Positions 3,041-57,100 of a stretch of DNA of 64,000 nucleotides are shown here, piece by piece. Origin of the DNA: Mobula hypostoma (lineage: Eukaryota); assembly GCF_963921235.1 (NCBI RefSeq), contig NW_026948199.1:62001-126000 (forward strand), in the 5' to 3' direction. The position numbers and the translations under genes are program-made. Every line of letters begins with the position of its first letter. The stretch's first letter is position 1. The notes below the pieces were generated by a model that was not told the DNA's origin, ran no database searches, and was given only the letters and a program-made list of their open reading frames with translations.

Positions 3041-3042
3041 AT

Positions 3043-3056
3043 TGGTGACCCCGACG
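3043..3056 (+). other. Primer-binding site complementary to tRNA-Trp
   Basis: TGGTGACCCCGACG, 2 nt after the 5' LTR, is complementary to the tRNA-Trp 3' end (...CGTCGGGGTCACCA). Confidence 0.9.
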
Positions 3057-3080
3057 GCCCAAACAATATTTGGACCAGAG

Positions 3081-6782: not shown

Positions 6783-6785
6783 TTA

Positions 6786-7071
6786 TGTGGCGACCCACTT
6801 TCTGGCACACACGAACCGGCTCACAACAGCGCGTGCAGGCAGAGGGCCGGCCCCAAAAAGGGCGCCAGGCCATCTTCACCAGCAGGGGGAAAATCCCGCG
6901 CGCGGGAAGGGTCTGGGAATATGCATTCCCCACAGCAAGCCCGCCCCAGGGAGGGCGGGAACAGGAAGGCTTTAAAGCAGGCCGCGAAGTTTGAATAAAT
7001 CTCTTTCGTCGCAACTCTAACTCACCGACTACGTGTGGTTATTCTAGCGCTGTGTGTAGCACACCGCTACA
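6786..7071 (+). repeat. 3' LTR of the Gypsy element
   Basis: Direct repeat of 2755-3040, preceded by the polypurine tract and followed by TSD ACTT. Confidence 0.97.
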
Positions 7072-27705: not shown

Positions 27706-28429
27706 TCATGGCATTATTTCAAGATCAAGAATATAGATGAAATATATAAATACACAAACTGTTACTTCAATTGTAACATTTTAAAAGGTTAGCTTGTGAT
27801 CACTGGAGAAAACCATGTATACTGCAGCGTGCTAGGAAATGAACTCCAATCGGGTATGGAAGGAAATGCATGAAAGAGCAACAGTTCACTGAAGCCAGAT
27901 ACCAGCACAGGAGACGAGGAATTAAGTGGAGAGAATAATCAATCTGTTCTAATTCCAAGGAGAACAGCAGGACTGTGCTGATGTGCAATTAGACTAAATT
28001 TGTCAAATGGAGTCAGAACTAAATACAACTCTGGAATGTCTCTGCTTTCACTCAAGTTGCCTCCGCCCCTCTCTTTAGCTCACCTTCCTATCCAAACAAC
28101 TCCTTCACCCTCTGTCCTTATCACCCAACTCTTCCCTCACCCCTAACCTCCCCTTACCCTAACTCAGCGACTCCTCGGCCCCTCATCACCCATAACCTCC
28201 CCCCACACATCCTGAACCCCACCTTCACATGTCAACCCCCTCGACCTCACTCAGCTTAGACACCTCATGCGGACACCCTGAACTCTCCTTCACCCACGTA
28301 AACTGACCCATCATTCACACCATGACCCCTCCCAAATGCACTGCCTCTCCTACCCTGACTCATCATTACCCCAACCTCATTCAGATTACCCCCTCCCCCT
28401 CACGTGTCAATTCCACCCTCACACCTCAG

Positions 28430-29870
28430 CCACTCCCTCATCCTCACAACCCGACCCCTCCCTCACCCTCTCACCTCAACCCCTCCCTCACCCCGACCAC
28501 TCCCACTCCCTCATCCTCACACCCAACCCCTCCCTCACCCTCTCACCCCGACCCTTCCCTCACCCTCAGCCCAACCCCTCCCTCAACTCTGACCCCTCCC
28601 TCATCCCCTGACCCTCTCCTCATCCTCAGCCTGACCCCTCCCTCACACCCTGACCATTCCCACACCCCGACCCCTCCGTCATCCTCACCCCGACCCCTCC
28701 CTCCCCCTCACACCCAGACCCCTCCCTCCCCCACACCCCGACCCCTCCCTCCCCCTCACACCCAGACCCCTCCGTCATCCTTACCCCGACCCTTTCCTCA
28801 TCCCGACCCCTCCCTCCCCCTCACACCCAGACCCCTCCGTCATCCTCACCCCGACCCCTCCCTCCCCCTCAAACCCAGACCCCTCCCTCCCCCTCACACC
28901 CAGACCCCTCCGTCATCCTCACCCCAACCCCTCCCTCCCCCTCACACCCAGAGCCCTCCCTCCCCCTCACACCCAGACCCCTCCGTCATCCTCACCCCGA
29001 CCCCTCCCTCCCCCTCACACCCAGACCCCTCCCTCCCCCTCACACCCAGACCCCTCCGTCATCCTCACCCCAACCCCTCCCTCTCACACCCAGACCCCTC
29101 CCTCCCCCTCACACCCAGACCCCTCCGTCATCCTCACCCCGACCCCTCCCTCCTCCTCACACCCAGACCCCTCCGTCATCCTTACCCCGACCCTTTCGTC
29201 ATCCCGACCCCTCCCTCCCCCACACCCAGACCCCTCCCTCCCCCTCACACCCAGACCCCTCCGTCATCCTCACCCCGACCCCTCCCTCCCCCACACCCCG
29301 ACCCCTCCCTCCCCCTCACACCCAGACCCCTCCCTCCCCCTCACACCCAGACCCCTCCGTCATCCTCACCCCGACCCCTCCCTCCCCCTCACACCCAGAC
29401 CCCTCCCTCCCCCACACCCCGACCCCTCCCTCCCCCTCACACCCAGACCCCTCCGTCATCCTTACCCCGACCCTTTCCTCATCCCGACCCCTCCCTCCCC
29501 CTCACACCCAGACCCCTCCCTCCCCCTCACACCCAGACCCCTCCGTCATCCTCACCCCGACCCCTCCCTCCCCCTCACACCCAGACCCCTCCGTCATCCT
29601 CACCCCGACCCCTCCCTCCCCCTCACACCCAGACCCCTCCCTCCCCCTCACACCCAGACCCCTCCGTCATCCTCACCCCGACCCCTCCCTCCCCCTCACA
29701 CCCAGACCCCTCCGTCATCCTCACCCCGACCCCTCCCTCCCCCTCACACCCAGACCCCTCCGTCATCCTTACCCCGACCCTTTCCTCATCCCGACCCCTC
29801 CCTCCCCCTCACACCCAGACCCCTCCGTCATCCTCACCCCGACCCCTCCCTCCCCCCCACACCCAACTAC
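28430..29870. repeat. C-rich minisatellite (23-25-bp units, G-rich on the minus strand)
   Basis: Units CACACCCAGACCCCTCCCTCCCCCT, CACACCCAGACCCCTCCGTCATCCT and CACCCCGACCCCTCCCTCCCCCT. Confidence 0.95.
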
Positions 29871-31819: not shown

Positions 31820-32360
31820 GAGACATCGAAAAGTAGAGCTCAGAAACAGGCCCTTCAGCCCATCTAGTCCATACCGAACCATTTAAGCTGCCTACTTCCA
31901 TTGACCTCCACCGGGACCACAACCCTCCATGTACCTGTCCAAACTTCTCTTAAATGTTGAAATTGAGCTTGCTTGCAGCACTTGCGATAGCAGCTCGTTC
32001 CACACTCTGAGTGAAGAAGTTTTCCCTCATATTCCCCTTAAACGTTTCGTCTTTCACCCTAACCCATGACCTCTGGTTGTAGCCCTGTCCAACCTCAATG
32101 GAAAAAGCCTGCTTGCAGTTACCCCATCTACACCCCTCATAATTTTGTATACCTTTATCAAACCCCCTCTCAATCTTCTACATTCCAAGGAAGAAAGTCC
32201 TAATCTTTCCTGATAAATCCGGCAACATCCTTGTACTTTTTCAACCTTATTTACATCTTTCCTGTAGCTAGGTGACCAAACGTGTCCACAACACTCCAAG
32301 TTCAGACTCTCCAATGTATAACAACTTCAGCATAACATCCCATCTCCTGTGCTCGATACT
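31820..32360 (-). mobile_element. CR1 3' fragment
   Basis: WSPSYRKDVNKVE..RRLRGGLIKVYKIM..TRGHGL. Confidence 0.8.
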
Positions 32361-33564
32361 GGAGATTGTATCGCACACTTTCAGCTGTTTCTTCCACTTT
32401 CCCAGCATTTCCATCTCCTTCAGAGCAGCTGCAGTGAACAAGCCTCCTCCCCAGGTCATGCCGTCTCCACCACGCCATCAACACCCCTCAGTTCTTTCTG
32501 ACCCTTCCCCTTCTCTACAACAGGGGACGTGTTCCGTTTCACACTTCCAGAAACATTGGCTCTGTTTCTCTGTCCCACTGCCTGACCAGCTCAGTGTTTT
32601 CGCTCAAATTTCCAGCACGAGTAGTTTCCCGCTTCCCTCCTGCTCTGCAATGAGGCAACACTCAGAAGTATTCGGGTGTGTCATAGTCTCTGGAGGGCGG
32701 CCGCAGAATGCCTGAACCAAAATCATGGCATTACTTTATTGTGGATCAGTGCAGGCTTGTGTCTCAAACAACTTGGGCCCAGAGATGGTACCAGGTTACA
32801 CAGAGCAGCACAGAACAGGCCCTTCGGCCCACAATGCTGTGCTGACCTATTCTTTCCCTGCCACACAGCCCACCACTCTCCATCTTCCTTTCACTCTTGA
32901 GCCTATCTAAAAGTTTCTTAAATGTCCCCAACGTATGTGCCCAAACCAGCACCCCGACAGTGCACTCCACACAGCCAGCACACTGTGTGTAAAAAGCCTA
33001 CCTCTGACATCTCCCCTAAAGTTTGCTCCACTCACCCTAACAGCGTTCGCCATTGGCACCAGGGTTAAAAACTACCGGATACCCACCGTGTCTGTGCTTC
33101 TCATAATCTTACAAACCTCTCACCCACCTTCATTCCGAAGAGGAAGAGCCCAACCTTTCTGCATATGACATACTCTCTAGTCCCAGTAAATCTCTTCTGC
33201 ACCTTCTCTACAGCTTCTGCATCCTTCCTATAATGAGGCGACCAGGAGTGAATTCAATATTACCTCACTTGGACAAACCTTGGGCCTGTAAGGAGAGCAA
33301 ACACGGTGGCAACAGCCTCACCTCCCCAATGCCAGGAGGGTAACGTGCAGGTGCAACAAGCTGTTAAGAAGGTAGGTGCATCAGCTTTATTGAAAGAGAT
33401 TTAAGAGACGTTTCACTCCACTTGGACAGTGTCCTGGTGAGACCGCACCTGGAATATCACATACCCAGAGAAGCATAGACGTGGCGGAGGGAGTGCAGGA
33501 GTTAGGACCTCTTACTCCAAAAATACAGGGCACCAGTGAGACTGTCCGTGGAATATTGTGTACT

Positions 33565-33925
33565 GGTCTGGTCCTCCGACTCAGCGGGGGGGGCGCTACG
33601 GTCCTCCGACTCAACGGGGGAGGGGCGCTACGGTCTTCTGACTCAACGGGGGAGGGGCGCTACGGTCTTCTGACTCAGCGAGGGGGCGCTACGGTCTTCT
33701 GACTCAGCGGGGGGGTACTACGGTCCTCCGACTCAGCGGGGGGGCGCTACGGTCTTCCGACTCAGCGGGGGGGGGCGTTACAGTCCTCCGACTTAGCGGG
33801 GGGGGGCGTTACAGTCCTCCGACTTAGCGGGGGGGAGGGTGCTACGGTCTTCTGACAGCGGGGGAGGCAGTACGGTCTTCCGACAGCGGGGTGGGGGGGG
33901 CACTACGGTCCTCCGACTCGGCGGG
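33565..33925 (+). repeat. G-rich minisatellite (~30-bp unit) arising inside a degraded CR1 fragment
   Basis: Unit GCTACGGTC(C/T)TCCGACTCAGCGGGGGGGGC, about 12 copies. Confidence 0.9.
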
Positions 33926-34568
33926 GCGTGGACTTGTAAGGAGCGTAGCAAAGGCTCATGAGGAATAATCATTAGACATAACAAAATCTTTGGAGTTTGA
34001 TAGGAAGGGTGATCTCCTTGGCAGTGCCCAGATCCACAGAATGAAGGGGCTACTCGGGACAGAGGTGGGGGAGAAACTCCTTCCCCCAGAGAGGAGTGAA
34101 GGTCAGGAATTCTCTTCCGCCCTCTGGATGTTAGGGGAATGGAGGGAGAGAGGGAAGGTGGCACTGAGGTAGCAAATGGGGTCAAATGGGAAGGCAGGAA
34201 TGTGGGAGGGTGAATTATCCCCTCGCACAGAAATAGACCCTCAATTTCAGGTCTCGTTCTTGGATTGGGGAGGGGGTACAGCGTAACAGCTCTCTCCAAT
34301 TTCTCAGGCACTCTGCTTTACCTGGGCCAGCCGCTCAATGTCAGAGGAGGGGGTATCGAAGCAGGAGGGAGAGGAGGGTCCAGCAGTGTGTCGAGGAGAA
34401 GAGGGAAGAGGCCCAGAACGCGGTGGTGGTCTCGGGGAGGGTGGAAACACCAGGCCTGGGATCAGAGTGTGCCTACGCTCAGAGACATGCGCCCGGCTGA
34501 GTGTGTGGGTGAGGGGGGGTTGTCCTGCGGCCTCACGCCGGGGGTGGAAGAGGAGGGAAGGCGTGCGG

Positions 34569-34803
34569 TCAGTACATGAGCTGGTACAGCAGGTTGGTGG
34601 CGTCCGGCAGCAGGGCCACGGAGCCGTCTGTCTGCTCCTCCCCGCCTTCCCGGCCGTCCGCGCACAGCGCCACGATCCGCACGCCCGGGATCACCCCCTC
34701 TGACCTCCCACCCTCCCCCGCCCCTGCCGCCTCTCTGTTGCCCTCAAACTCCTCCTCTGACTGCCGGGCCTTGCCTGGCGCCTCTTGTGGCACGGTGGCT
34801 GAG
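34569..34803 (-). CDS. BANP: BANP-like gene, coding exon 4 (last; stop TGA at 34571-34569)
   Basis: Acceptor CCCCCACAG|C; phase-2 join (AG+C = Ser) keeps the frame: SATVPQEAPGK...VIPGVRIVALC...GSVALLPDATNLLYQLMY*. Confidence 0.7.
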
Positions 34804-35049
34804 CTGTGGGGGTTGGGGGGGGGAAGAGGTGAGGGATTAGTTTGGGGGGGGTGATGAATGGGTGGGATGGGGGGGAGAAAATTAAACACAGAATTAAATT
34901 AGATCCAACACAAGCTCACCTCCCCAGTCCTTTTCCCCTCAAGGACCCTCAACAATGGGGGAAGGACCCACCTCGAACCTCACTTTCACAACATGGGACC
35001 AAGTTCGAGTGTGTGGGTAGGGTGGGGGAGGACGAGGAGTGAGTAGGGT

Positions 35050-36081
35050 TTGCAGTGACTAGTGGGGTACTACAAGGCTCAGTGCTGCCCCAGTTGTTTA
35101 CAATATATATTAATAACTTAGACGAGGGAATTAAATGCAACATCTCCAAGTTTGCGGATGACACGAAGCAGGGCAGCAGTGTTAGCTGTGAGGAGGATGC
35201 TAAGAGGATGCAGGGTGACTTGGATAGGTTAGGCGAGTGGGCAAATTCATGGCAGATGCAATTTAATGTGGATAAATGTGAGGTTATCCACTTTGGTGGC
35301 AAGAACAGGAAAACAGATTATTTTCTGAATGGTGGCCGATTAGGAAAAGGGGAGGTGCAACGAGACCTGGGTGTCATTATACACCAGTCATTGAAAGTGG
35401 GCATGCAGGTACAGCAGGCAGTGAAAAAGGCGAATGGTATGCTGGCATTCATAGCAAGAGGATTCAAGTACAGGAGTAGGGAGGTACTACTGCAATTGTA
35501 CAAGGCCTTGGTGAGACCACACCTGGAGTATTGTGTGCAGTTTTGATCCCCTAATCTGAGGAAAGACATTCTTGCCATAGAGGGAGTACAAAGAAGGTTC
35601 ACCAGATTGATTCCTGGGATGGCAGGACTTTCATATGATGAAAGACTGGATCGACTCGGCTTATACTCTCTGGAATTTAGAAGATTGAGGGGGGATCTGA
35701 TTGAAACGTATAAGGTTCTAAAGGGATTGGACAGCTTAGATGTAGGAAAATTGTTCCTGATATTGGGGAAGTCCAGAACGAGGGGTCACAGTTTGAGGAT
35801 AAAGGGGAAGCCTTTAGGACCGAGATTAGGAAAAACTTCTTCACACAGAGAGTGGTGAATCTGTGGAATTCTCTGCCACAGGAAACAGCTGAGGCCAGTT
35901 CACTGGCTATATTTAAGAGGGAGTTAGATATGGCCCTGTGGCTAAAGGGATCAGGGGGTATGGAGGGAAGGCTGGTACAGGGTTCTGAGTTGGATGATCA
36001 GCCATGATGGTACTGAATGGCGATGCAGGCTCGAAGGGCCGAATGGCCTACTCCTGCACCTATTTTCTATGTTTCTATGTT
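35050..36081 (+). mobile_element. CR1 3' fragment (RT C-terminus plus tail)
   Basis: TSGVLQGSVL, KFADDTK, LVRPHLEYCVQF; tail (TTTCTATG)n. Confidence 0.9.
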
Positions 36082-37250
36082 TGTCAGGTCTGAGGACTGG
36101 AGGGTGGGCTTGAGCAAAGAGACGGACAGGATGAGGGCGGACGAGAGATTGGGAGTGAAAGGCAGCAAGGAACAGAAGGGGAGGAGGGACAGGGGTTCAG
36201 GGTAGGGAGGTTGGGCTGCTCGAGGAAGATGGGGTGAAGGGATGTGAGATGTTCAGGGAGGAGGGGGGAGAGACTGGAGACTGTGTGTGGGGAAAAGTGG
36301 AAATGGAGAGATGGGGGATCAGGGGCTGGGGAAGATGCCCAGGGAGGAGGGTTAGCAGGGAATGGGGAGACAATTCTGATTAGGAATGGGGTAGGGAGGA
36401 GAGAACGGGGACAAGGTGTGGGGGGGAAGGGGTGAGATGCTCATCGAGGAGGGGGTAGGATAAATGGCAATGGGAATGTCTGGGGAGGAGAGAGTGCAGG
36501 AGGTGCGTGAAGAGCCACAGGGTGGTGAGTCTGTGGAATTCGTTGCCACAGACAGCTGTGGAGGCCAAGTCACTGGGTGTATTTGAAGCAGAGGTTGATG
36601 GGTTCTTGATTGGCCAGGGAGTCAAAGGTTATGGGGAGAAGGGAGGAGAATGGGATTGAGAGGGAAAATATATCACCCATGATGGAACATGAAGCAGACT
36701 CGATGGGCCGAATGGCCTAATCTGCTCCTGTGTCTTACAGTTGTGTGGTCGTCATTCTCGTGGGTGGGTGGGAGAGATGGCTGGGGAGGAGGAGCGAAGA
36801 TGCCAGTGTGGGAGGACGGACATACGGCAGGGAGAGGGGGGAACAGGACTGGGGAGGAAGAGAGCAGGTGGCAGAAAGGTCACCACCCCGAGGGGTGTTG
36901 TGGACTGAACTGGCCCCCACCCCCACCCTATCTCCTCATCAACATGACTACCCAACCCAGCACCCCTCTCTCTTCCCTCCCCGTCAACCCCACCCAGAAC
37001 TCTGCCCCTTTCCCTCACCCCCACCCACAGCCCCCAAATCACCACCGAGAAACCCCAGCACCCACACCACCACCCAGCCTCTCTACACTCTCCTAAGCCC
37101 CATCGTTCCTCCCAACCAGTCCCCCTGCACTCTTCTGCCCTCAGTCACAGCAACCCCAGCACCCACACCACCACCTAACTCTCCTGCTCCCCCTCAGATT
37201 CTGTCACCCCCGCCTCTTCCTCCCTCGACACCCCTCACACCACCACCCAC

Positions 37251-37438
37251 CTGCCGCCAACTGGCTGCTGCCCCTCCGGCCTCTGTGGCTCGGCCAGTGG
37301 CGGCCGCAGCACATTCTGATTGGCCAGCAGGTCGACCTTCGCCCTCAGGCACTTGCATTTGTCCTCCATGGAGTTGAGGTCAGCCTCAATGGCATCCAGG
37401 CGCAGGCAGAGGGTCTTGCTGGCAGAGTAGAGGAGGGC
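37251..37438 (-). CDS. BANP: BANP-like gene, coding exon 3 (coiled coil)
   Basis: CCCCTAG|GCC acceptor and AG|GTGGGT donor, 188 nt. ALLYSASKTLCLRLDAIEADLNSMEDKCKCLRAKVDLL aligns with recalled BANP SFLYSINQTICLRLDSIEAKLQALEATCKSLEEKLDLV. Confidence 0.88.
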
Positions 37439-38235
37439 CTAGGGGATGGAATTGGGGGGGGGGTGGGAGAAGTGAGATGAAGGAAGGAGAGGGAGAGAGA
37501 TTGGTGCTGAGTTAAGCAAGGAGAGACCAAGTCAGCTGACAGGCGGCTGGCCTCACCATGAACTTTGACCCCAGAGTCCGTGTGTGTCACCTTTCACTGT
37601 GAGGCAGAGAGGATCGAAACAGGCCCTTCAGCCCATCATATCTATACCGACCAGCGTGCCCCATCCACACAAACCACACTTGCCTGCATCAATTCGATAT
37701 CCCTTTGCACCCTGTTCAGTCAAACACCCACCTGACGTCTCAGAAATATTGTTAGTGTTCCTGCCTCCACCACCTCCTCTGGCAGCTCATTCCGGATCCC
37801 AACAACTGCATGAGGAATTTATGCATCAAATCTCATTAAAGTTCCCCTCTCTCACATCAAACCTATGCTCCCTTGTTTAGGCACCCTTACTACGGGAAGC
37901 AGACACTTTTCTCTTTACACTTCTTGTGATATTATACGTAACCCATAATAAGGTTTTGTCCCTCCTGGAAAAACAGTCCCAGCCCTCCAATCCTGGTAAT
38001 ATCCCTGTTGATCTTTTCTGCACCCTTTCCCAGTTTTTATAAAGCCCTTCGTGAAGCCGGGGGACCAGGACTGCATACAGTACTCCAGGTGGGGCCTGTC
38101 GGTGGTGTGGACCTTTCATGCATGTGGGATTGATCGTTGACTGTGAACTTGGCCAATACAAGAGAGCATCCTTGTTAAGGTCAGCGCTGGAAAGTTTCGG
38201 AGAGATTCCAGAGAGTGTTAAGAGGTTTTTTTTGA

Positions 38236-41200
38236 CACAGAGCGTTCGCCGCCTACGAGACAGAGTGTGTTCGCCGCCTACGGCAACACAGAGAACGTCC
38301 GCCGCCTACGGCGACACAGAGAGCGTCCGCCGCCTACCGCGACACACGTTCGCCACCTGCAGCGACACGGAGAGCATCCGCTGCCTACCGCGACACACGT
38401 TCGCCGCCTACAACGACACGGAGAGCGTCCGCCGCCTACCGTGACACACGTTCGCCGCCTACGGCGACACAGAGAGCGTCCGCCGCCTACCGCGACACAC
38501 GTTCGCCACCTGCAGCGACACGGAGAGCATCCGCTGCCTACCGCGACACACGTTCGCCGCCTGCAGCGACACGGAGAGCATCCGCTGCCTACCGCGACAC
38601 ACGTTCGCTGCCTACAACGACACGGAGAGCGTCCGCCGCCTACCATGACACACGTTCGCCGCCTACAACGACACGGAGAGCATCCGCTGCCTACCGCGAC
38701 ACACGTTCGCCGCCTGCAGCGACACGGAGAGCATCCGCTGCCTACCGCGACACACGTTCGCCGCCTACAACGACACAGAGAGCGTCCGCCGCCTACCACG
38801 ACACAGATTCGCTGCCTACAACGACACGGAGAGCGTCCGCCGCCTACCACGACACACATTCGCCGCCTACAGCAACACGGAGAGCGTCCGCCGCCTACAG
38901 CGACACGGAGAGCGTCCGCCGCCTACAGCGACACACGCTCGCCGCCTACAGCGACACGGAGAGCGTCCGCCGCCTACCGTGACACACGCTCGCCGCCTAC
39001 AACGACACGGAGAGCGTCCGCCGCCTACCACGACACAGATTCGCTGCCTACAACGACACGGAGAGCGTCCGCTGCCTACCACGACACACATTCGCCGCCT
39101 ACAGCTACACGGAGAGGGTCAGCCGCCTACAGCGACACGGAGAGCGTCCGCCGCCTACAGCGACACACGCTCGCCGCCTACAGCGACACGGAGAGCGTCC
39201 GCCGCCTACCGTGACACACGCTCGCCGCCTACAACGACACGGAGAGCGTCCGCCACCTACCGCGACACACGTTCGCCGCCTACAACGACACGGAGAGCGT
39301 CCGCCGCCTACCACGACACACATTCGCCGCCTACAGCGACACGGAGAGCGTCCGCCGCCTACAGCGACACACGCTCGCCGCCTACAGCGACACGGAGAGC
39401 GTCCGTCGCCTACCGTGACACACGCTCGCCGCCTACAACGACATGGAGAGCGTCCGCCACCTACCGCGACACACTTTCGCCGCCTACAGCGACACGGAGA
39501 GTGTCCGCCGCCTACTGTGACACACGTTCGCCACCTACAGCGACACGGAGAGCGTCCGCCGCCTACCGTGACACACGCTCGCCGCCTACAACGACACGGA
39601 GAGCGTCCGCCACCTACCGCGACACACGTTCGCCGCCTACAGCGACACGGAGAGTGTCCGCCGCCTACTGTGACACACGTTCGCCGCCTACAACGACACG
39701 GAGAGCGTCCGCCGCCTACCGCGACACACGTTCGCCGCCTACAGCGACACGGAGAGCGTCCGCCACCTACAGCGACACACGTTCGCCGCCTACAGCGACA
39801 CGGAGAGTGTCCGCCGCCTACCGCGACACACGTTCGCCGCCTACAGCGACACGGAGAGCGTCCGCCACCTACAGCGACACACGTTCGCCGCCTACAGTGA
39901 CACGGAGAGCGTCCGCCGCCTACCACGACACAGATTCGCCGCCTACAATGACACGGAGAGCGTCCGCCGCCTACCACGACACACATTCGCCGCCTACAGC
40001 AACACGGAGAGCGTCCGCCGCCTACAGCGACACGGAGAGCGTCCGCCGCCTACAGCGACACGGAGAGCGTCCGCCGCCTACAGCGACACACGCTCGCCGC
40101 CTACAGCGACACGGAGAGCGTCCGCCGCCTACCGTGACACACGCTCGCCGCCTACAACGACACGGAGAGCGTCCGCCGCCTACCACGACACAGATTCGCT
40201 GCCTACAACGACACGGAGAGCGTCCGCCGCCTACCACGACACACATTCGCCGCCTACAGCTACACGGAGAGCGTCCGCCGCCTACAGCGACACGGAGAGC
40301 GTCCGCCGCCTACAGCGACACACGCTCGCCGCCTACAGCGACACGGAGAGCGTCCGCCGCCTACCGTGACACACGCTCGCCGCCTACAACGACACGGAGA
40401 GCGTCCGCCACCTACCGCGACACACGTTCGCCGCCTACAGCGACACGGAGAGTGTCCGCCACCTACCGCGACACACGTTCGCCGCCTACAGCGACACGGA
40501 GAGTGTCCGCCACCTACCGCGACACACGTTCGCCGCCTACAACGACACGGAGAGCGTCCGCCGCCTACCACGACACAGATTCGCCGCCTACAACGACACG
40601 GAGAGCGTCCGCCGCCTACCACGACACACATTCGCCGCCTACAGCGACACGGAGAGCGTCCGCCGCCTACAGCGACACACGCTCGCCGCCTACAGCGACA
40701 CGGAGAGCGTCCGCCGCCTACCGTGACACACGCTCGCCACCTACAACGACATGGAGAGCGTCCGCCACCTACCGCGACACACTTTCGCCGCCTACAGCGA
40801 CACGGAGAGTGTCCGCCGCCTACTGTGACACACGTTCGCCACCTACAGCGACACGGAGAGCGTCCGCCGCCTACCGTGACACACGCTCGCCGCCTACAAC
40901 GACACGGAGAGCGTCCGCCACCTACCACGACACACGTTCGCCGCCTACAGCGACACGGAGAGTGTCCGCCGCCTACCGTGACACACGTTCGCCGCCTACA
41001 ACGACACGGAGAGCGTCCGCCGCCTACCGCGACACACGTTCGCCGCCTACAGCGACACGGAGAGCGTCCGCCACCTACAGCGACACACGTTCGCCGCCTA
41101 CAGCGACACGGAGAGTGTCCGCCGCCTACCGCGACACACGTTCGCCGCCTACAGCGACACGGAGAGCGTCCGCCACCTACAGCGACACACGTTCGCCGCC

Positions 41201-42125
41201 TACAGTGACACGGAGAGCGTCCGCCGCCTACCACGACACACATTCGCCGCCTACCGCGACACGGAGAGCGTCCGCCACCTACCGCGACACACATTCGCCG
41301 CCTACAGCGACACGGAGAGTGTCCGCCGCCTACCGCGACACACGTTCGCCGCCTACAACGACACGGAGAGCGTCCGCCGCCTACCACGACACAGATTCGC
41401 CGCCTACAACGACACGGAGAGCGTCCGCCGCCTACCACGACACACATTCGCCGCCTACAGCAACACGGAGAGCGTCCGCCGCCTACAGCGACACGGAGAG
41501 CGTCCGCCGCCTACAGCGACACACGCTCGCCGCCTACAGCGACACGGAGAGCGTCCGCCGCCTACCGTGACACACGCTCGCCGCCTACAACGACACGGAG
41601 AGCGTCCACCACCTACCGCGACACACGTTCGCCGCCTACAGCGACACGGAGAGTGTCCGCCGCCTACTGTGACACACGTTCGCCGCCTACAGCGACACGG
41701 AGAGCGTCCGCCGCCTACCGTGACACACGCTCGCCGCCTACAACGACACGGAGAGCGTCCGCCACCTACCGCGACACACGTTCGCCGCCTACAGCGACAC
41801 GGAGAGTGTCCGCCGCCTACTGTGACACACGTTCGCCGCCTACAACGACACGGAGAGCGTCCGCCGCCTACCGCGACACACGTTCGCCGCCTACAGTGAC
41901 ACGGAGAGCGTCCGCCGCCTACCACGACACACATTCGCCGCCTACCGCGACACACATTCGCCGCCTACAGCGACACGGAGAGCGTCCGCCGCCTACAGCG
42001 ACACACGTTCGCCGCCTACAGCGACACACGTCCGCCGCCTACAACGACACACGTTCGCCGCCTACAGCGACACACGTCCGCCGCCTACAGCGGCACGAAG
42101 AGCACTCGCCGCCTACAGCGAGACA
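38236..42125. repeat. ~3.9-kb CpG-rich minisatellite of 28-bp and 23-bp units (51-bp dimer), intronic
   Basis: Units GACACGGAGAGCGTCCGCCGCCTACAGC and GACACACGTTCGCCGCCTACAGC, with variants. Confidence 0.97.
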
Positions 42126-44098
42126 GAGAGCGTTTGCTGCACTGCGGGGGTGGAGGTGAAGGTTGATAAGCAAGCGCCGTTACAAAGACCCGACAGTGCC
42201 TCCACATTCTTTGAAGTTTGCTCAGAATCGACATCCCACCAAAGCCCTTGCCAACCTTCTACAGATGTACAATGAAGAGTATCCTAAGTGGTTGCATCAG
42301 AACCTACAGAAACACTGGTGCTCAGAAATGGAGAGTGGTGGACACAGCCCAGTCCATTACAAGCCATTGAGTCCACTTACAAGGAATGATGCCAGAAGAA
42401 AGCAGCATCCATCACCAAGACCCCCACCAACATCGGGCAGGAGCTACAGGAGCCTTGGGTCCCACACCACCAGGTTCAAGGACAGTTGTTACCCTACAAC
42501 CATCAGGCTCCTGAACCAGCGTGGGTAACTTCACTCACAACCGCCCCGAACTGATTCTACCATCTGCAGACTCACTTTCAGTCACTTCTTTACAACTGAT
42601 ATTCTCAGTACTTTTGTCTTTGCACAGTTTTGCACATCGATTTGTCCGCCTTTGATTACGTATAGTTCCTTCTAAATTCTATGCTATTTCTTTCCTTCCC
42701 TGTAAATGCATCTGAAAGCAGTAGACGGTAACGTATGCATACTTTGATAATAAGCTTACTTTGAGCAATAGGGACTCAGGTGGATGTAAGTAAAATGGAG
42801 GGTTTGGACTGTCAGATTGATCATGGAGGAGGTTTGTATTGGTCCACACAACATCATGGGCTGAAGGGACCCTCCTGTTCTGTGTAAACTTCATCGGGGG
42901 GGGGGGTCAGTGACATTGAACCTTGACCCCAGGGGTACACAGCTCAGTGTAAACTTTGACCCTAAGGCAGGAAGGAACACCTCTCGCCCTAGGCTTTGAT
43001 CCTGACGGTGTGAACTGAAATGTGCTGGAGGCCGAAGGAGACAATCTGCCCTGGGGTTAGAGGGCTGCTTATGTGCGTGGGTCGGTGGGGAGGGGAAGGC
43101 CTTGCTGTCGCTGCTCGGTACGTTCAGTTTTGTTGTGTTCAGCGTCATTCTGGACGTGCTACGCCAGCAGCGAAACGCATGGCGATGTTTGTGGGCTGCC
43201 CCCAACGTACAGTATTTCACTCTATGTTCCGAAGTACACGTGATAAATAGATCTGAATCCGAACTCCCGCGTTTAACCAGAACGTTTCGGTCTACTTGAG
43301 GAACTGTGACCTGCCCGGGAAGCAACCTGGAGTGCTTCCATCTCTGCCACTGAAGAGGCAGAGAGGGTTCGGGGAGGGAATTCGGCACCAACGAGCCTTG
43401 GCCCAGCGGATGAAGGGAAAGGCCTCCTACTGAGTTCAAGGAGCAGAGAGATCGGGGGTGACGAGAGTTCCTCAGAGGGCGAGGCAGCTATCAGTGAAAC
43501 AATTGCAATGGACACAATCATTTGTCCCCAGTTAGGCTGGCAGGGTTTGCTCTCCCAGACTACAGAGAGTACCAGGGCAGATCTCATTGAAAATCCTCCC
43601 GGGTGGTCATATTGAGGAATATCTGATCGGCGGGGGAGGTTTGGACGGTTTCCCCTGACCGGGGTCACCATCCCAGAATAAGGGGTCATGCAGGGGGCGG
43701 GGAGGGGATGTGATTAAGGTGAACCTCTGGAATTCGCCCCAGCCCCAGAGGGAGGTCAGCCGCTGAGTTTTGGGCCTGAAGGGAAGATTGGGAGTCGGGG
43801 TTAGTGCAGGGAAGAGGTGGCGAGGTTTCCTCAGAGCCAGGGGTGCTGGTTGGGTGGTCACAAGGAAGACAGTGATGGTGATGGGATTCAGAGAGCCCAC
43901 GCAGTTTAGGATGAAGCCCATAGAAGTTGACGAGTAGAAATCACACCAGGAGTCTTATTCCCCCAAGATTCTCATGAAGAGTCAGAAAATCCAGTGCTTG
44001 ACACCCCTCCACTGGTGTCCTGAGTAACCCGGGTACAACAGCTGCTTTTAAGGGGAACGTACGCCAGCCGCACACTTGGGACTGGCTCTTCCCCATAC

Positions 44099-44211
44099 CT
44101 GAATGCTATCCTCTCCTTCCTCGGTCTCTACTTGTGACACCTCCACTCTGCGGCGTTTCCCACTGGGACTGGAACCGTCCCGATCATCTGTGTGGGAGCT
44201 TTGCTGGCTAC
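44099..44211 (-). CDS. BANP: BANP-like gene, coding exon 2 (NLS-like KRRR)
   Basis: CCCCCACAG|GT acceptor and CAG|GTATGG donor, 113 nt. ..SPSGKRRRVEV..EDSIQ resembles BANP PALKRQRLEI..DPSIK. Confidence 0.85.
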
Positions 44212-44649
44212 CTGTGGGGGTGAGAGGAGATGGTGACTGTCGAGGCAGGATCTGAGGGAAATCAGAACACAGTCCTGGTGAAGTCAGCAGCGATTTACAA
44301 TGTACAGGCAAATACATACTGGTATTTATAGATCTCTGCAGATTCTATTCAATATCCAGACTTTAACCTCTAACTTCATTTTTATATAATTATTTATCCT
44401 TCATAAGGAATTATATAAAAGATGAAGATAGGCATTAAATTACAGACATACTCGAACATTGTTTTTCATTGTATTCCACACCCTGACAAACACACCACAG
44501 TAAATTCCTAATCCTTCACCCCGGGTGGACATTACCATCCATATGGGAAAAGGCTAGCGAAGTGGACTGACAGAAAATGGTCTGGAACTAGCGTCATGTT
44601 CAATGGGAAGAGAAGGGATCAAACGGCGATGTGCACAGCAGGAGGGAAT

Positions 44650-45850
44650 AGGAAAGGGTGGGGTCCCTTTGGGATTGTGTTCGTTGGGAGTGAATGGAAA
44701 GGGGTGGCGTCCATTGGGATTGTGGACGGTGGGAGTGAATGGAAAGGGATGGGGTCCTTTGGGATTGTGTACGGTGGGAGTGAATGGGAAGGAGTGGGGT
44801 CCATTGGGATTGTGTATAGTGGGAGTGAATGGGAAGGGATGATCCATTGGGATTGTGTATAGTGGGAGTGAATGGGAAGGGATGGGGTCCATTGGGATTG
44901 TGTATGGTGGGAGTGAATGGGAAGGGATGGAGTCCATTGGGATTGTGTATGGTGGCAGTGAATGGGAAGGGGTGGGGTCCATTGGGATTGTGTACAGTGG
45001 GAGTGAAGGGGAAGGAATGATCCATTGGGATTGTGTACAGTGGGAGTGAATGGGAAGGAGTGATCCATTGGGATTGTGTACGGTGGGAGTGAATGGGAAG
45101 GGGTGGGGTCCATTGGGATTGTGTATAGTGGGAGTGAATGGGAAGGAGTGGCGTCCATTGGGATTGTGGACGGTGGGAGTGAATGGGAAGGAGTGGGGTC
45201 CATTGGGATTGTGTATGGTGGGAGTGAATGGGAAGGGATGGGGTCCATTGGGATTGTGTACGGTGGGAGTGAATGGGAAGGGATGGGGTCCATTGGGATT
45301 GTGTATAGTGGGAGTGAATGGGAAGGGATGGGGTCCATTGGGATTGTGTATAGTGGGAGTGAATGGGAAGGGATGGGTCCCATTGGGATTGTGTATAGTG
45401 GGAGTGAATGGGAAGGGATGGGTCCCATTGGGATTGTGTATAGTGGGAGTGAACGGGAAGGGGTGATCCATTGGGATTGTGTATGGTGGGAGTGAATGGG
45501 AAGGAGTGGCGTCCATTGGGATTGTGGACGGTGGGAGTGAATGGGAAGGAGTGGGGTCCATTGGGATTGTGTATGGTGGGAGTGAATGGGAAGGGATGGG
45601 GTCCATTGGGATTGTGTACGGTGGGAGTGAATGGGAAGGGATGGGGTCCATTGGGATTGTGTATAGTGGGAGTGAATGGGAAGGGATGGGGTCCATTGGG
45701 ATTGTGTATGGTGGGAGTGAATGGGAAGGGATGGGGTCCATTGGGATTGTGTACGGTGGGAGTGAATGGGAAGGGATGGGTCCCATTGGAGTTGTATAAG
45801 GTGAGAGTGAATGGGAAGGGATGGGGTTCATTGGGATTCTGTACGGTGGG
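44650..45850. repeat. G-rich minisatellite, 45-bp unit (43-bp variants), about 27 copies
   Basis: Unit CCATTGGGATTGTGTA(T/C)(A/G)GTGGGAGTGAATGGGAAGGGATGGGGT. Confidence 0.97.
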
Positions 45851-46524
45851 GAAAGATCGGGAAGGTGGGGGTCTGTTAGGACAGTGAATGGCCTGTGTGT
45901 ACGTGAGCACAGCCAGGTCTCTTTGACAGAGTAAATCTGGGCCCCTGTGCCAAATGCCCAGTCAGCACTGTCTAATCTCCTTTCTGCATGCTTATGGCCC
46001 TTCCCTCTGCCGCAAGATAAAATGGGTCGCTTGTCCTTTCTCAGCAAAAGCAGAAAAACGAAGTGTCAGCTGATATAGTCCTCCCGGGCTATCCAAGGTG
46101 CGAAGGGCAAATACAGATAAGATGTTTCTACACCAGCTGAAGGGCGTCATAAACAGCAGATAATCATTTAATAAAGGGTGTCTGGGAGCTCAGAAACCGC
46201 TGTGTTGCCCAGAGAGCAGCAAGAATGTGAAACCTGGCTCACAAAGTTTGCATTGACGGTTTTAAGCAAGGGTGGGGTGGGGGGAGGCTGACTCCACTCT
46301 CCATAAACACAAAATCAAAAACTGCATATGCTGCAAACCAACTCATCAATGAGGGAGGGGGTGCACCCTAAACTCTGAGGGGAGGGCAAAGGTTAGAGTT
46401 GCAGCCAACAACCTTTTGCACCGTTTCTCGACGGCTGCTTTATGAAACAGTGCTGTTCCTACACCAGGGAGCAGCCACCATCTCCTTCCCCACCTATCTC
46501 CGGAATCCCCTCCCTCCCCACCAG

Positions 46525-46790
46525 CTCTGGTGACCTGGACTCGATCCCCAACCTCAGGCGGGATTGGGTGGAGTCTGCACGTTCTCCCCGTGGCCCCAGA
46601 GGCTCCACCTCACTCCCACGACCCAGGGAAGCACCGGTCAGTGGGTCAGCAGCTCAGTGTGTGGGTGGGAGGCGGAATCTGGGGCAGGGGGTAATGCAAT
46701 GAGGTCAGCATTGGATTAGTGTAACTGTGTGGTTGATAGCACAGACTCAATGGGTTGAAGGGTCTCGGCCTGTGCTGGTCGGGTTTGTGA
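46525..46790 (+). mobile_element. Degenerate HE1/V-SINE-like element
   Basis: GTGGAGTCTGCACGTTCTCCCCGTG V-domain-like core and a CR1-type tail GACTCAATGGGTTGAAGGG. Similar remnants at ~50110-50365, ~51535-51700, ~59490-59705 and ~60210-60300. Confidence 0.6.
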
Positions 46791-47470
46791 CTCCCTTCTG
46801 AAAGTTACAGTTTAATCCAGATTCACTCCTCCTCTCGCTGCCGTGCACCCAGACCGCAACCAGTGTTTGAATGGGGTCTGCTTGAATGTCACCACTGGGA
46901 CTTCACCCCCCTGAAGTAACGGACAGGAGATGAACAAAACCGGGAGGGGTGTCGATAAGGTGGGTGGTCTCGGTATTCCCCCCCCCCCAGGGTAGGGGAG
47001 TCTAAAGCTAGAGTCCGGGGGAGAGATTTCCACACAGGGTGGAGGGAGCTGCTGGGAGATGTGGTGCAGGAGGATACAATGACTACATGTACAAGGCATT
47101 TGGACAGGTTCATGGATAGAGGGTTACAGGGAGAAATACAGGCAGACGGGATGAGTGCGGGGGTGGGGGCGGTTACTTGGTCAGTATGGACCAGTTGGGC
47201 TGAAGGGCCCGTTTGTACATTGCACAACTCTGCAGCTCCATCTCTCTGCGTTCTTAAGTCGTACCACAACGATTGCAGCCTCCACCCCCACTAGTCCCCC
47301 CTCCGACATACCACCCCCCTCTCGCCACTCAGGACCCTCCCGCACTCCGAAAGCATCAGCCCCTCTCTGCATCTGTGTCGTCGGCTGGGCCACTAGGCCA
47401 AGGGGAGGGGAGCCCCGTCAGACTGGCCGGGGTGTGGTGGGGGGAGAGAGGGAGACCGTACAGCACGTAC

Positions 47471-47537
47471 CGTCGGGGTCTGATGCAAATTGCCGCACTG
47501 CGATCTCCACCATCTCTGCGAGCGGTTGCTCTGCCAT
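47471..47537 (-). CDS. BANP: BANP-like gene, first coding exon (whole exon 47580-47471, ATG at 47537)
   Basis: Acceptor TTCTGTCTGCCGCAG|, Kozak GACATGG, donor G|GTACGT. MAEQPLAEMVEIAVRQFASDPD resembles BANP MSEHDLADVVQIAVEDLSPDHP. Confidence 0.85.
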
Positions 47538-48534
47538 GTCGGGGCTGGGGGTTCGGACTCGCTGCACAGGAGGATCCAGGCTGCGGCAGACAGAACGAGG
47601 ATAAGCCGGGAAACCAGTTCCTCCAGACTTCCTTCCCTCACCCACCCCACAGAACCACACCGGGTTCATCTTCCCTTCTCCCGCTCCCATCCCCATCCCT
47701 CTCCAATATATCCAGTGACCTGCCATCCCACAGAGAAAATCATTTCTCTGCCCCCATCTTGAAAACAGCGTCTCCCCGCCCCCCCCGGATCTAAATTCCA
47801 TCTCCCCCAGCAGGGGAAAACACCATCTCAGCTCTCCCCCATTAAGCCTGGCCACAGAATCAATAAGATCTCTCTCATTCCCCAGTGAGAGCCTGCCCAA
47901 CCTTTCCCAGTAAGGGAGGCCCTCTCCCCCGAGCTACAGACCCAGTGAACCCTCCCTGCATCAGCCCCAGTGCTTGAGACTCCCTTCAGAAATGTACAAC
48001 GCAGCACCGTGCACAAGTCCCCAGTGCGACCGCACTGACAGCCCGTAAGTGAGGGAACAGGATTGCCCGGAGAGTCAGCGGGAACTCAGTGGGCCGAATA
48101 GCCTCCTATGCTGGCAGAAATTATGAAAAATGCACGAGCAGGAACAATGTGGGGGTCACACTCAGGACGAGGAATGGGGAAAAATTCCTCCTGCCGTAAC
48201 CCCCCCTTACACAGGGAGGTAAAACCCCACCTGGGAGAATTGAGTGCTGTGCTGGTCACCACACTATAGACAAGGAGGGATTGCAAAGGAGATTCCCCAA
48301 AGGGTTGCCTGAATTGGCAGCCTTTGATTATGGGGAAAGATTGGATGGGCTGGGACCGGTCCCTGGAGTGAAGAAGGCCTTAGCGTAGAAGAACACTTTA
48401 ACAGGTTGCATCACTGTCTGGTACGGAGGGGCCAATACACAGGATCGGGGGAAAAAAAGCTGCAGAGGAATGCAAACTCAGACAGCTCCGTCACGGGCAC
48501 TAGCCTCCCGAGCTCCGCGGACACCTTCAAAAGT

Positions 48535-56279: not shown

Positions 56280-57100
56280 ACCCCGCACGGGAGCTGAAAT
56301 GGCAAGTCTCGCGAGCTCTCGTCTCTCGCGGGAGCCACCCACCGACCTGTCAGTCAGTCGCAGGTGAGCAGCTCAGACGGCAGGGGGCGAGACCCGAACC
56401 CGCTCTCCGCGCCGGCGTCCAATCAGGGTGGCCTACTCGCGCCCTTCCATTGGTCGACGTCTATGACTGACAAGATGCGGCTGTAACCGTTAGAGAGACG
56501 GGAGGTTGCGAGGCCGCCCGGCGAATGAAGAAGCAAAAACCCTCCCTCGGAAGTAATCCTGCTGCTCAGTCTACCGGCGGAATACCTTCTCAGTGTTTTC
56601 TTTGAGTTTCTGTGTTCGGTGGAGAACTCTAGAGATAAAGTGCTGGCAGAAAATCGGCCATTACCATCAGCGGCTTCGCTCCACCTTTGTTGTACACTGA
56701 ACACCCCTGACTGCCCCCAACAAAGATGGCGTCGAGAGTCTTACTTCTAATTGGTTGGCGGAATGCCCCGTTATCTGGACTGAACCAATGGCTGCAGCCT
56801 CGCTTATCTGCCTGACCAATCAATTGATGCCGGTGGGCTTTTTCTCTCTGGCGGAGCCACGCAGTCGCCAATCAGATAACCGGTTAGTTTATCTCTCGCT
56901 TCACCGCTGTGTTCTGCCCTGTGAGTGATGAGGATGCTTTCTGTTGACAGTAGGCAATGGCCAATCGGAGATAAGATTTAGGGCCGCCGTTTGTGTAGAC
57001 TCTAATCTCTGATTGGTTGGAAAGTCACAGCAAACTGTCACGGTGTCCAATCAAAGGAACCATATGCTTTTTCTCCATAACTATCAGCCAATCAAGTTTG
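56280..57100. promoter_or_regulatory. CpG-island promoter (probable BANP-like TSS ~56400 on the minus strand; possibly bidirectional)
   Basis: CpG-rich unique DNA; about ten CCAAT/ATTGG boxes; YY1 motif AAGATGGCG at ~56723; two CGCG elements at 56307 and 56324. Confidence 0.75.
56347..56410 (-). other. Candidate non-coding exon 1 of the BANP-like gene
   Basis: Donor CAG|GTCGGT at 56347/56346, downstream of CCAAT boxes at 56419 and 56448. The 5' end is approximate. Confidence 0.5.

What the first reader, a model, noticed from the sequence alone, without database searches (positions are those of the whole stretch)
34569..47580. Hidden four-exon BANP paralog that keeps the coiled coil but lacks the BEN DNA-binding domain
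Seen in sequence: four minus-strand exons with canonical AG/GT sites (67+113+188+235 = 603 nt; intron phases 1, 0, 2) join into an uninterrupted 200-aa ORF: MAEQPLAEMVEIAVRQFASDPDGSQQSSHTDDRDGSSPSGKRRRVEVSQVETEEGEDSIQALLYSASKTLCLRLDAIEADLNSMEDKCKCLRAKVDLLANQNVLRPPLAEPQRPEGQQPVGGSSATVPQEAPGKARQSEEEFEGNREAAGAGEGGRSEGVIPGVRIVALCADGREGGEEQTDGSVALLPDATNLLYQLMY. Established: BANP/SMAR1 has this N-terminus, a KRxR motif, a CLRLDxIE coiled coil and then a BEN domain. As I recall, its first introns also have phases 1, 0, 2. I found no BEN-like sequence (LLDYLF..SNLSG..KQLDP) in the window. Inference: this is a divergent, BEN-less paralog. It could oligomerise with BANP and act as a dominant-negative or adaptor, as Id proteins do for bHLH factors.
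Basis: partly seen in the sequence, partly recalled or inferred. Interest (0 to 1): 0.8.

Follow-up and report, generated by a model that had tools for sequence, protein, structure and literature searches.

The report
BEN-less BANP-like gene of devil ray
The four exons are a real, expressed 200-residue gene already listed in RefSeq as "protein BANP-like"; it keeps BANP's front end and coiled coil but has no DNA-binding domain, is conserved across sharks and rays, and has never been studied.

Summary
Four minus-strand exons (67+113+188+235 nt, GT/AG sites, phases 1/0/2) join into the stated 200-aa ORF. RNA contigs from three runs remove intron 3 exactly as predicted. They continue into exon 2 and run unspliced through the TGA into a 3'UTR of at least 670 nt. 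Intron depth is zero.

The gene is not hidden. Its protein is letter-for-letter RefSeq XP_062895785 "protein BANP-like" of Mobula hypostoma. Orthologs of about 200 aa exist in at least 14 shark and ray species, and most full-length models end in the same tail and stop.

The N-terminal helix, the nuclear signal plus coiled coil, and the C-terminal tail are under purifying selection (pN/pS 0.16-0.25). Overall dN/dS is about 0.3. Homology to BANP is significant (hhalign 98%, E 6e-15) but covers only residues 1-102. No BEN domain was found in the proteins, in the 64-kb window, or in 10 kb downstream in the zebra shark.

The BEN-less BANP-derived reading is therefore supported. Two points remain open. 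I could not show a separate canonical BANP in these genomes, because the hit lists filled with mammals. Hetero-oligomerisation with BANP is inference only. The scan had not met this gene on other DNA; one sister note on this window concerns CGCG motifs at 56.3 kb.

The parts
47471..47580 (-). ATG-containing exon: 43 nt of 5'UTR after an AG acceptor (47582-47581), ATG at 47537, 67 coding nt, GT donor at 47470-47469. Encodes the N-terminal helix (residues 6-18).
   Evidence: a cDNA contig of another species (L003) aligns over 47584-47467; helix from AF2
44099..44211 (-). Coding exon 2 (113 nt, enters in phase 1, leaves in phase 0): acidic linker and the KRRRVE nuclear-localisation-type motif.
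   Evidence: the loose end of RNA contigs at 37440 reads the end of this exon; K41-E46 invariant in 11 orthologs
37251..37438 (-). Coding exon 3 (188 nt, phase 0 to phase 2): the 45-residue coiled-coil helix (residues 59-103), the part homologous to BANP.
   Evidence: tblastn with mammalian BANP gives 51 % identity over 41 aa, E 3.7e-9; hhalign; AF2 pLDDT 93-97; RNA contigs cover 37251-37440
34569..34803 (-). Coding part of the last exon (235 nt including TGA 34571-34569): disordered acidic region, the PGVxIVALCADG block, and the conserved tail ending ...LLPDATNLLYQLMY.
   Evidence: junction 34803/37251 in RNA contigs of X1, X2, X3; tail pN/pS 0.155
32735..34568 (-). 3'UTR, continuous with the last coding exon. 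AATAAA signals lie at 33391-33386 and 32740-32735. A 29-nt tandem repeat (33570-33926) inside it breaks the assembled contigs.
   Evidence: One RNA contig runs 33901-34803 without a break. Depth falls in steps from about 253 to about 120, 64 and 19 going down the window (X1), while intron depth is 0. PolyA signals; repeat.
56307..56333 (-). Candidate promoter element, not shown to belong to this gene. Two tandem CGCG palindromes, each one mismatch from TCTCGCGAGA, lie 60-120 bp downstream of CCAAT/ATTGG boxes in a local GC peak (0.64).
   Evidence: sister note s1-145027. Whether the upstream non-coding exon lies here was not tested.

Best explanation
This is the Mobula hypostoma gene for 'protein BANP-like'. 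It is a 200-residue nuclear protein derived from the BANP/SMAR1 gene and is single-copy and orthologous across sharks and rays.

Shown: it keeps BANP's first ~100 residues, namely a short N-terminal helix, a KRRRVE basic motif and a 45-residue coiled-coil helix, with the same exon phases. It then continues into a family-specific, mostly disordered acidic half that ends in a conserved short hydrophobic helix (...LLPDATNLLYQLMY) and a stop. It has no BEN domain and none of BANP's C-terminal DNA-binding/oligomerisation region. It is spliced as predicted, is polyadenylated within the window, and is under purifying selection in exactly those three modules.

Inferred: BANP's coiled coil is one of its two oligomerisation modules, and oligomerisation gives BANP its preference for unmethylated CGCG. 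All a/d core positions of that coil are identical or conservatively replaced in the BANP-like protein. The protein most likely enters BANP oligomers, or forms its own, in the nucleus. There it would replace DNA-binding subunits with a subunit that instead carries an acidic-plus-hydrophobic tail. That makes it a modulator or adaptor of BANP-driven CpG-island promoters rather than a DNA binder. The sign of the effect (inhibitor or co-activator) is open.
For: Exons, ORF and splice sites.

RNA: the intron-3 junction, the link to exon 2, read-through of the TGA into the 3'UTR and zero intron depth come; polyA signals.

Identity to RefSeq XP_062895785 and the same CDS span.

Orthologs in at least 14 elasmobranch species, with intron-less cDNA contigs from two more transcriptomes. 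The gene tree separates sharks from the ray sequences (ray side unresolved) and recovers the shark orders. The same 4-exon structure and phases occur in Stegostoma.

Selection: dN/dS is 0.28-0.38 overall. pN/pS is 0.17 (N-terminal helix), 0.25 (NLS plus coiled coil) and 0.155 (tail), against 0.7-0.8 in the linkers.

Homology to BANP residues 1-96 only. No BEN.

AF2: helices at 6-18, 59-103 (pLDDT above 93) and 191-199, the rest disordered.

BANP's coiled coil mediates oligomerisation, and oligomerisation is needed for methylation-sensitive CGCG binding: PMC11472053.

Core heptad positions in the alignment (BANP-like/BANP): L63/L57, S67/N61, L70/I64, L74/L68, I77/I71, L81/L75, M84/L78, C88/C82, L91/L85, V95/L89, L98/V92.
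Against: No experiment or multimer model links this protein to BANP.

A canonical BEN-bearing BANP in Mobula or any elasmobranch was not retrieved here, so its supposed partner is assumed from general knowledge.

The coiled coils are only about 50 % identical, and several e/g positions differ, which could equally make the two coils orthogonal.

Logan contigs drop rare variants, so a minor isoform that splices out of the last exon cannot be excluded.

The runs are labelled 'RNA?' (a guess), although the spliced contigs and the silent introns argue for RNA.

dS is about 1.1-1.3, near saturation, so the dN/dS values are rough.
Confidence: 0.55

Rival explanations
1. Same gene and protein, but it works independently of BANP. 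The coiled coil forms only homo-oligomers, and the conserved acidic stretch plus hydrophobic C-terminal helix is the business end, for example an activation-domain-like or partner-docking motif. After about 300 My of divergence the protein would be an autonomous nuclear scaffold or cofactor.
For: The tail is the most constrained block (pN/pS 0.155) and has no counterpart in BANP. Coiled-coil identity to BANP is only about 50 %. In the invariant positions listed, K87 and R92 replace BANP's T81 and E86 at flanking (g/e) positions, so pairing specificity has changed.
Against: All hydrophobic core positions, the polar 'a' residue and the core Cys are retained relative to BANP, and the N-terminal helix and NLS are retained too. 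This is most simply explained by a shared partner or assembly. The K87/R92 pair would repel in an in-register parallel homodimer but would meet Glu in BANP (inference).
Confidence: 0.3
2. It is not a paralog but the elasmobranch ortholog of BANP, having lost the BEN domain and C-terminus. No canonical BANP would exist in these genomes.
For: I could not retrieve any shark or ray BANP with a BEN domain. The two searches that could reach full-length BANP listed only mammals among their 120 best hits.
Against: The failure is a listing limit (938 and 927 hits, 120 shown), not an absence. RefSeq names the gene 'BANP-like' or 'uncharacterized LOC', not BANP. From general knowledge, not tested here, BANP is reported to be essential and highly conserved in vertebrates. 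Near-consensus BANP motifs are still present in this very window.
Confidence: 0.07
3. The four exons are the 5' part of a longer BANP gene. The 200-aa product would be a short alternative isoform, and BEN exons would lie beyond the window's low end.
For: This was my own first guess. The 34 kb downstream of the stop is retroelement-rich and looks like intron. Weak GT sites exist inside the last exon.
Against: RNA contigs run through the stop into a 3'UTR with two AATAAA signals and stepwise falling depth. All RefSeq isoforms retrieved, from 14 species, are 119-230 aa. Most full-length orthologs keep the stop position, and the tail is under strong constraint. The compact Stegostoma gene has no BEN-like sequence in 10 kb downstream.
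Confidence: 0.05
4. It is a transcribed relic (pseudogene or non-functional ORF) left by a partial duplication of BANP.
For: Half of the protein is disordered and evolves almost neutrally (pN/pS 0.7-0.8). No Pfam domain is found.
Against: The ORF is intact in at least 14 species spanning the shark-ray split, with most full-length models sharing the same stop. Three blocks have pN/pS of 0.25 or less. Exon structure is conserved. RNA depth is robust and introns are silent.
Confidence: 0.03

Closest known systems
RefSeq model XP_062895785.1-XP_062895787.1 'protein BANP-like' [Mobula hypostoma], with its predicted orthologs ('protein BANP-like' or 'uncharacterized protein LOC...') in Mobula birostris, Hypanus, Hemitrygon, Pristis, Carcharodon, Cetorhinus, Stegostoma, Hemiscyllium, Chiloscyllium, Scyliorhinus, Mustelus and Pristiophorus
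   Same: The M. hypostoma model is identical in sequence and CDS span. The orthologs are 56-99 % identical; the full-length models have the same modules, and all but Pristis the same stop.
   Different: Nothing differs; this is the same gene. The database entries are automatic predictions with no function, and I found no paper on them.
BANP / SMAR1 (BTG3-associated nuclear protein), the CGCG-motif, CpG-island-binding BEN-domain factor
   Same: Residues 1-102 align to BANP 1-96 at 40 % identity (hhalign 98.4 %). This covers the N-terminal helix, the KRxR motif and the coiled coil with a conserved hydrophobic core. The intron phases 1/0/2 around these exons match those implied by BANP fragment isoforms.
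   Different: There is no BEN domain (PF10523) and no Q-rich C-terminal DNA-binding/oligomerisation region. The C-terminal 100 residues have no significant match to BANP: the best weak collinear match is at BANP 197-212, E 0.09-0.7 with a search space of one sequence. Length is 200 aa against about 500-560 aa.
Id proteins and other 'microProtein'-type regulators: paralogs of transcription factors that keep the oligomerisation domain and lack the DNA-binding domain
   Same: The architecture follows the same logic: the oligomerisation module is kept and the DNA-binding module is absent.
   Different: The fold and family are different (coiled coil rather than HLH). Heteromerisation with the parent factor is not shown. 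This protein also carries a conserved acidic/hydrophobic tail that pure titrators do not need.

Membership tests
BANP/SMAR1 family | N-terminal region homologous to BANP (helix, KRxR motif, coiled coil) | tested here: met
   hhalign of 11 orthologs against 10 BANPs gives probability 98.4 %, E 5.7e-15 over 97 columns. phmmer and tblastn hits of the coiled-coil exon to BANP give E 1e-4 to 4e-9.
BANP/SMAR1 family | BEN DNA-binding domain (Pfam PF10523) | tested here: not met
   0 of 11 orthologs match PF10523 at E<=1, and none of the exon translations does. Canonical BANP finds no BEN-like exon in the 64-kb window or in the 26.8-kb Stegostoma locus. A motif scan was negative.
BANP/SMAR1 family | C-terminal Q-rich DNA-binding / second oligomerisation region | tested here: not met
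   The protein ends at residue 200. Nothing beyond residue 102 aligns with BANP.
BANP/SMAR1 family | Shared intron positions and phases in the N-terminal exons | tested here: inconclusive
   The window and Stegostoma both show phases 1/0/2. Mammalian BANP fragments diverge exactly at HP|V/G, at IK|SFLY and at KVR|C/W, which fits phases 1, 0 and 2. No BANP genomic locus was examined directly.
Dominant-negative / microProtein-type paralog (Id-like logic) | Keeps the parent factor's oligomerisation module and lacks its DNA-binding module | tested here: met
   Coiled coil retained and BEN absent. BANP's coiled coil is an oligomerisation module (PMC11472053).
Dominant-negative / microProtein-type paralog (Id-like logic) | The parent factor (BEN-bearing BANP) coexists in the same genome | tested here: inconclusive
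   Two of the three homolog searches aimed at this. Their lists were cut at the 120 best hits, all mammalian, so elasmobranch BANP was neither seen nor excluded.
Dominant-negative / microProtein-type paralog (Id-like logic) | Physical hetero-oligomerisation with the parent factor and an effect on its DNA binding | not testable with these tools
   Only single-chain prediction is available. The case rests on conserved a/d core residues.
Processed or unitary pseudogene | Disrupted ORF, no expression, or dN/dS near 1 over the whole length | tested here: not met
   The ORF is intact in at least 14 species, spliced RNA is present, and dN/dS is 0.28-0.38 with three blocks at 0.25 or less.

The most novel reading that the evidence does not exclude
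Sharks and rays carry a lineage-specific, roughly 300-My-old natural 'subunit poison or adaptor' for BANP. This BEN-less coiled-coil protein would co-assemble with BANP tetramers and retune how CpG-island promoters read CGCG methylation. It would itself be driven by BANP motifs in its own promoter (56.3 kb), closing a feedback loop.
Probability: 0.2. Interest if true: 0.65.

Novelty: new variant of a known kind. Interest (0 to 1): 0.4.

Why it matters
BANP is the factor that reads unmethylated CGCG elements and switches on essential CpG-island promoters. Its selectivity depends on oligomerisation (PMC11472053). A naturally occurring relative that keeps only the oligomerisation end and has been conserved since before sharks and rays split would be a ready-made probe of that mechanism. 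It would show whether BANP activity can be tuned by subunit composition, and its invariant tail points to an unknown partner. For annotation, it gives about 15 'uncharacterized' or 'BANP-like' database entries a common definition: an elasmobranch family with the BANP N-terminal homology region, an acidic disordered region and a conserved LLPDATNLLYQLMY end. The value is limited because the gene model is already public, the family looks confined to one vertebrate lineage, and the function is untested.

Tried and rejected
1. My starting hypothesis (70 %) was that these are the 5' exons of the canonical BANP gene, with BEN exons beyond the window. I rejected it because RNA contigs pass the stop into a 3'UTR with polyA signals, the stop and tail are conserved, and only short isoforms are annotated in 14 species.

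2. I tried to find a canonical elasmobranch BANP. A search with a mammalian BANP over residues 1-300 and one with a mixed BANP plus BANP-like alignment each returned over 900 hits, of which only 120 were shown, all mammals. The Atlas search gives only phylum-level taxa. Paper searches found nothing relevant. The question stays open.

3. I asked whether the C-terminal half is a remnant of the first BEN strands and helix (PGVRIVALCAD against SNVTLITLNSE, ALLPDA against AIIPSD). A profile of the tail against BANP scores -1 bit, E 0.09-0.7 with a search space of one sequence. The match is collinear but not significant, so I do not claim it.

4. I first inferred a first exon near 56-57 kb from the 23.7-kb 'gene range' of M. 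birostris. I withdrew this because the ranges are CDS spans: the M. hypostoma range equals 34569..47537.

5. Pfam on the single exons and on all orthologs gave only chance-level coiled-coil hits. Protein-atlas look-alikes were at chance level, with a best score of 0.83.

6. I searched for relatives outside elasmobranchs. The 62-aa phmmer search over 1.8 billion representatives and the word-indexed search found none. One divergent cDNA (SRR24105886) falls on the unresolved ray side of the tree. Absence elsewhere is not proven.


Full report
**Observation**

- The exon limits are ATG 47537..47471 (67 nt), 44211..44099 (113 nt), 37438..37251 (188 nt) and 34803..34569 (235 nt including the TGA).
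- Each exon is bounded by AG and GT, and the phases are 1, 0 and 2.
- The joined 603 nt translate to exactly the 200 residues quoted.
At least one non-coding exon must therefore lie further upstream.

**Transcripts**

I laid Logan contigs of four runs on window 32000-37600.
- In runs X1 and X2 (same organism, no differences), one contig covers 33901-34803 without a break. It skips 2,447 nt with ends CT..AC on the + strand, which is GT..AG on the gene strand, and then covers 37251-37440.
- X3 carries the same junction in a shorter contig.
- The part that hangs off at 37440 reads the reverse complement of the end of exon 2. So the exon 2/3 and exon 3/4 junctions are both as predicted.
- The contig passes straight through the TGA (34571-34569) into at least 670 nt of 3'UTR.
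- Going further down the window, depth falls in steps (about 253, 120, 64, 19 in X1). AATAAA signals lie at 33391-33386 and 32740-32735 on the gene strand.
- A 29-nt tandem repeat at 33570-33926 explains why the contigs break there.
- Unique intron stretches (34805-34991, 36862-37235) have depth 0 in all four runs. They serve as the silent control against DNA contamination.
Assembled contigs cannot exclude rare isoforms.

**What the gene is**

A phmmer search with the coiled-coil exon found two ~205-aa proteins ending in the same ...DATNLLYQLMY tail, plus mammalian BANP fragments at 51 % identity. A follow-up search and a cluster look-up showed a family of predicted proteins in the following species:
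- Rays: Mobula hypostoma, M. birostris, Hypanus sabinus, Hemitrygon akajei, Pristis pectinata.
- Sharks: Hemiscyllium ocellatum, Chiloscyllium punctatum, C. plagiosum, Stegostoma tigrinum, Cetorhinus maximus, Carcharodon carcharias, Scyliorhinus torazame, Mustelus asterias, Pristiophorus japonicus.

They are named 'protein BANP-like' or 'uncharacterized protein LOC...'. The window's product is letter-for-letter the M. hypostoma entry XP_062895785. That entry's CDS span of 12,969 bp equals 34569..47537. The gene is therefore not hidden; it is an automatic RefSeq model. I found no paper on it. Two further species contribute intron-less ~1-kb cDNA contigs carrying the whole ORF.

**Conservation**

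- All isoforms retrieved are 119-230 aa.
- Most full-length models share the stop position. Pristis reads 18 residues further, and a few models are truncated.
- The Stegostoma gene, which is compact at 6.8 kb, has the same four coding exons (70+113+188+244 nt) and phases 1/0/2.
- The gene tree separates the sharks from the ray sequences and recovers the shark orders, but the ray side is unresolved. This fits single-copy orthologs older than the shark-ray split.
- Pairwise dN/dS among the window, Stegostoma and the two cDNAs is 0.28-0.38. dS is about 1.05-1.26, which is close to saturation.
- By block, pN/pS is 0.17 (residues 1-19), 0.25 (KRRR motif plus coiled coil, residues 40-103) and 0.155 (last 15 residues). 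The disordered linkers give 0.7-0.8.
- The pseudogene condition is not met.

**Relation to BANP**

Profile-profile comparison of 11 orthologs with 10 BANPs gives probability 98.4 % and E 5.7e-15. The match covers only residues 1-102 against BANP 1-96, at 40 % identity.

Mammalian BANP fragments in the database diverge from BANP at three places:
- HP|V/G, where one base of the codon is shared.
- IK|SFLY.
- KVR|C/W, where two bases are shared.

This fits introns of phase 1, 0 and 2 at the positions seen here.

The C-terminal half has no significant match. The best match is weak and collinear, placing PGVxIVAL on BANP 197-212 just before the BEN domain (E 0.09-0.7 with a search space of one sequence).

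No BEN domain turned up in any test:
- 0 of 11 orthologs match Pfam PF10523.
- None of the exon translations matches.
- Canonical BANP finds nothing BEN-like in the 64-kb window. That includes 34.5 kb downstream of the stop, which is filled with an LTR retrotransposon, LINE fragments and satellites.
- It finds nothing in the 10 kb downstream of the Stegostoma gene either.

**Shape of the protein**

AlphaFold2 with the family alignment predicts helices at 6-18, 59-103 (pLDDT 93-97) and 191-199 (about 72). Everything else is disordered. The protein can be read as five parts in order:
- a short N-terminal helix;
- a basic nuclear-localisation-type motif in a linker;
- a long coiled-coil helix;
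- an acidic disordered region, expanded to runs of Glu in Mustelus (and Glu/Asp runs in the related cDNA);
- a short hydrophobic C-terminal helix.

**How it most likely works (inference)**

Ren et al. 2024 showed that BANP's N-terminal coiled coil drives oligomerisation and that full-length BANP is mainly a tetramer. They also showed that oligomerisation is required for BANP to prefer unmethylated CGCG (PMC11472053).

In the alignment, every a/d core position of the coil is identical or conservatively replaced. The pairs (BANP-like/BANP) are L63/L57, S67/N61, L70/I64, L74/L68, I77/I71, L81/L75, M84/L78, C88/C82, L91/L85, V95/L89 and L98/V92. This includes the polar 'a' residue and the core Cys.

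Two invariant flanking residues, K87 and R92, would repel each other in an in-register parallel homodimer. In a mixed pair, K87 would face BANP's Glu86. This hint assumes a parallel register and that elasmobranch BANP resembles the mammalian one.

I therefore favour a nuclear subunit that joins BANP assemblies without contributing DNA binding. The constrained acidic/hydrophobic tail argues that it also brings a partner, so it is more adaptor than pure Id-like poison. A BANP-independent role is the main rival.

**What is not shown**

- A separate BEN-bearing BANP in Mobula or any elasmobranch. Two of my three searches aimed at it, but their lists (938 and 927 hits) were cut to the 120 best, all mammalian. 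'Paralog' therefore rests on database naming and on the general conservation of BANP.
- Any physical link to BANP.
- The transcription start. The sister note on this window (s1-145027) places the first exon beside 56307-56333. I confirm two tandem palindromes there, each one mismatch from TCTCGCGAGA, downstream of CCAAT boxes in a GC peak. I did not confirm that transcripts start there.

**Verdict**

- 'Hidden' is wrong, 'paralog' is unproven here, and the mechanism is untested.
- I class it as an unstudied variant of a known family whose gene model is already public. Interest is moderate.

Noticed in passing
window 56307-56333 (context 56280-56470, minus strand): Two tandem CGCG palindromes (TCCCGCGAGA and GCTCGCGAGA), each one mismatch from the BANP motif TCTCGCGAGA. 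They lie just downstream of CCAAT and ATTGG boxes in a local GC peak (0.64). The only TCGCGA in the whole window is here. This could be the promoter of the BANP-like gene, but no transcript evidence was obtained.
   Followed up: partly
window 38235-42133: A GC-rich minisatellite of about 3.9 kb (51-nt unit, about 75 copies, 87 % matches) inside intron 2 of the gene. It is open in several frames and produces spurious ORFs of up to 863 aa. The CDS span in M. birostris is 23.7 kb against 13.0 kb here, so intron sizes differ greatly between the two Mobula species; the cause was not examined.
   Followed up: partly
window 44641-45850: A 45-nt minisatellite (27 copies, 90 % matches) in intron 1, with strong G skew. 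It gives spurious ORFs of 436-497 aa on the gene strand.
   Followed up: no
window 28414-29865: A C-rich array with periods of 24/48/73 nt (GC skew -0.8), which reads as a 664-aa proline-rich pseudo-ORF.
   Followed up: no
window 2754-6998 (+): LTR-retrotransposon coding region spread over several reading frames (not checked for intactness): DUF7041 gag-like, aspartyl protease, reverse transcriptase, RNase H and integrase core by Pfam. A separate LINE-type reverse transcriptase lies at 9086-10195.
   Followed up: partly
window 34992-36113 and 36488-36861 (intron 3): A reverse-transcriptase-bearing repeat (RVT_1 fragment at 35055-35546). Copies of it are massively represented in the RNA runs, with summed contig depth up to about 2x10^5 against about 250 for the gene's exons. 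It is a highly transcribed repeat family in Mobula.
   Followed up: no
window 33570-33926: A 29-nt tandem repeat (11.6 copies) inside the 3'UTR. It fragments the assembled transcript contigs at 33901-33930.
   Followed up: partly
orthologs P0161/P0017 (Pristis pectinata) and P0160 (Hypanus sabinus): The Pristis models read 18 residues past the otherwise conserved stop (…LMY then a proline-rich extension). Hypanus isoform X1 has a 37-residue N-terminal extension whose last 15 or so residues match the in-frame sequence just upstream of the ATG in this window (…LDPPVQRVRTPSPD). The frame upstream of the ATG is open in the window too.
   Followed up: no
run X5 (organism B) on window 33903-34625: A related species' transcript differs from the window by 14 substitutions, a 1-nt deletion and a 15-nt deletion (at 34442) in the 3'UTR and the end of the CDS. 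It otherwise has the same structure.
   Followed up: no
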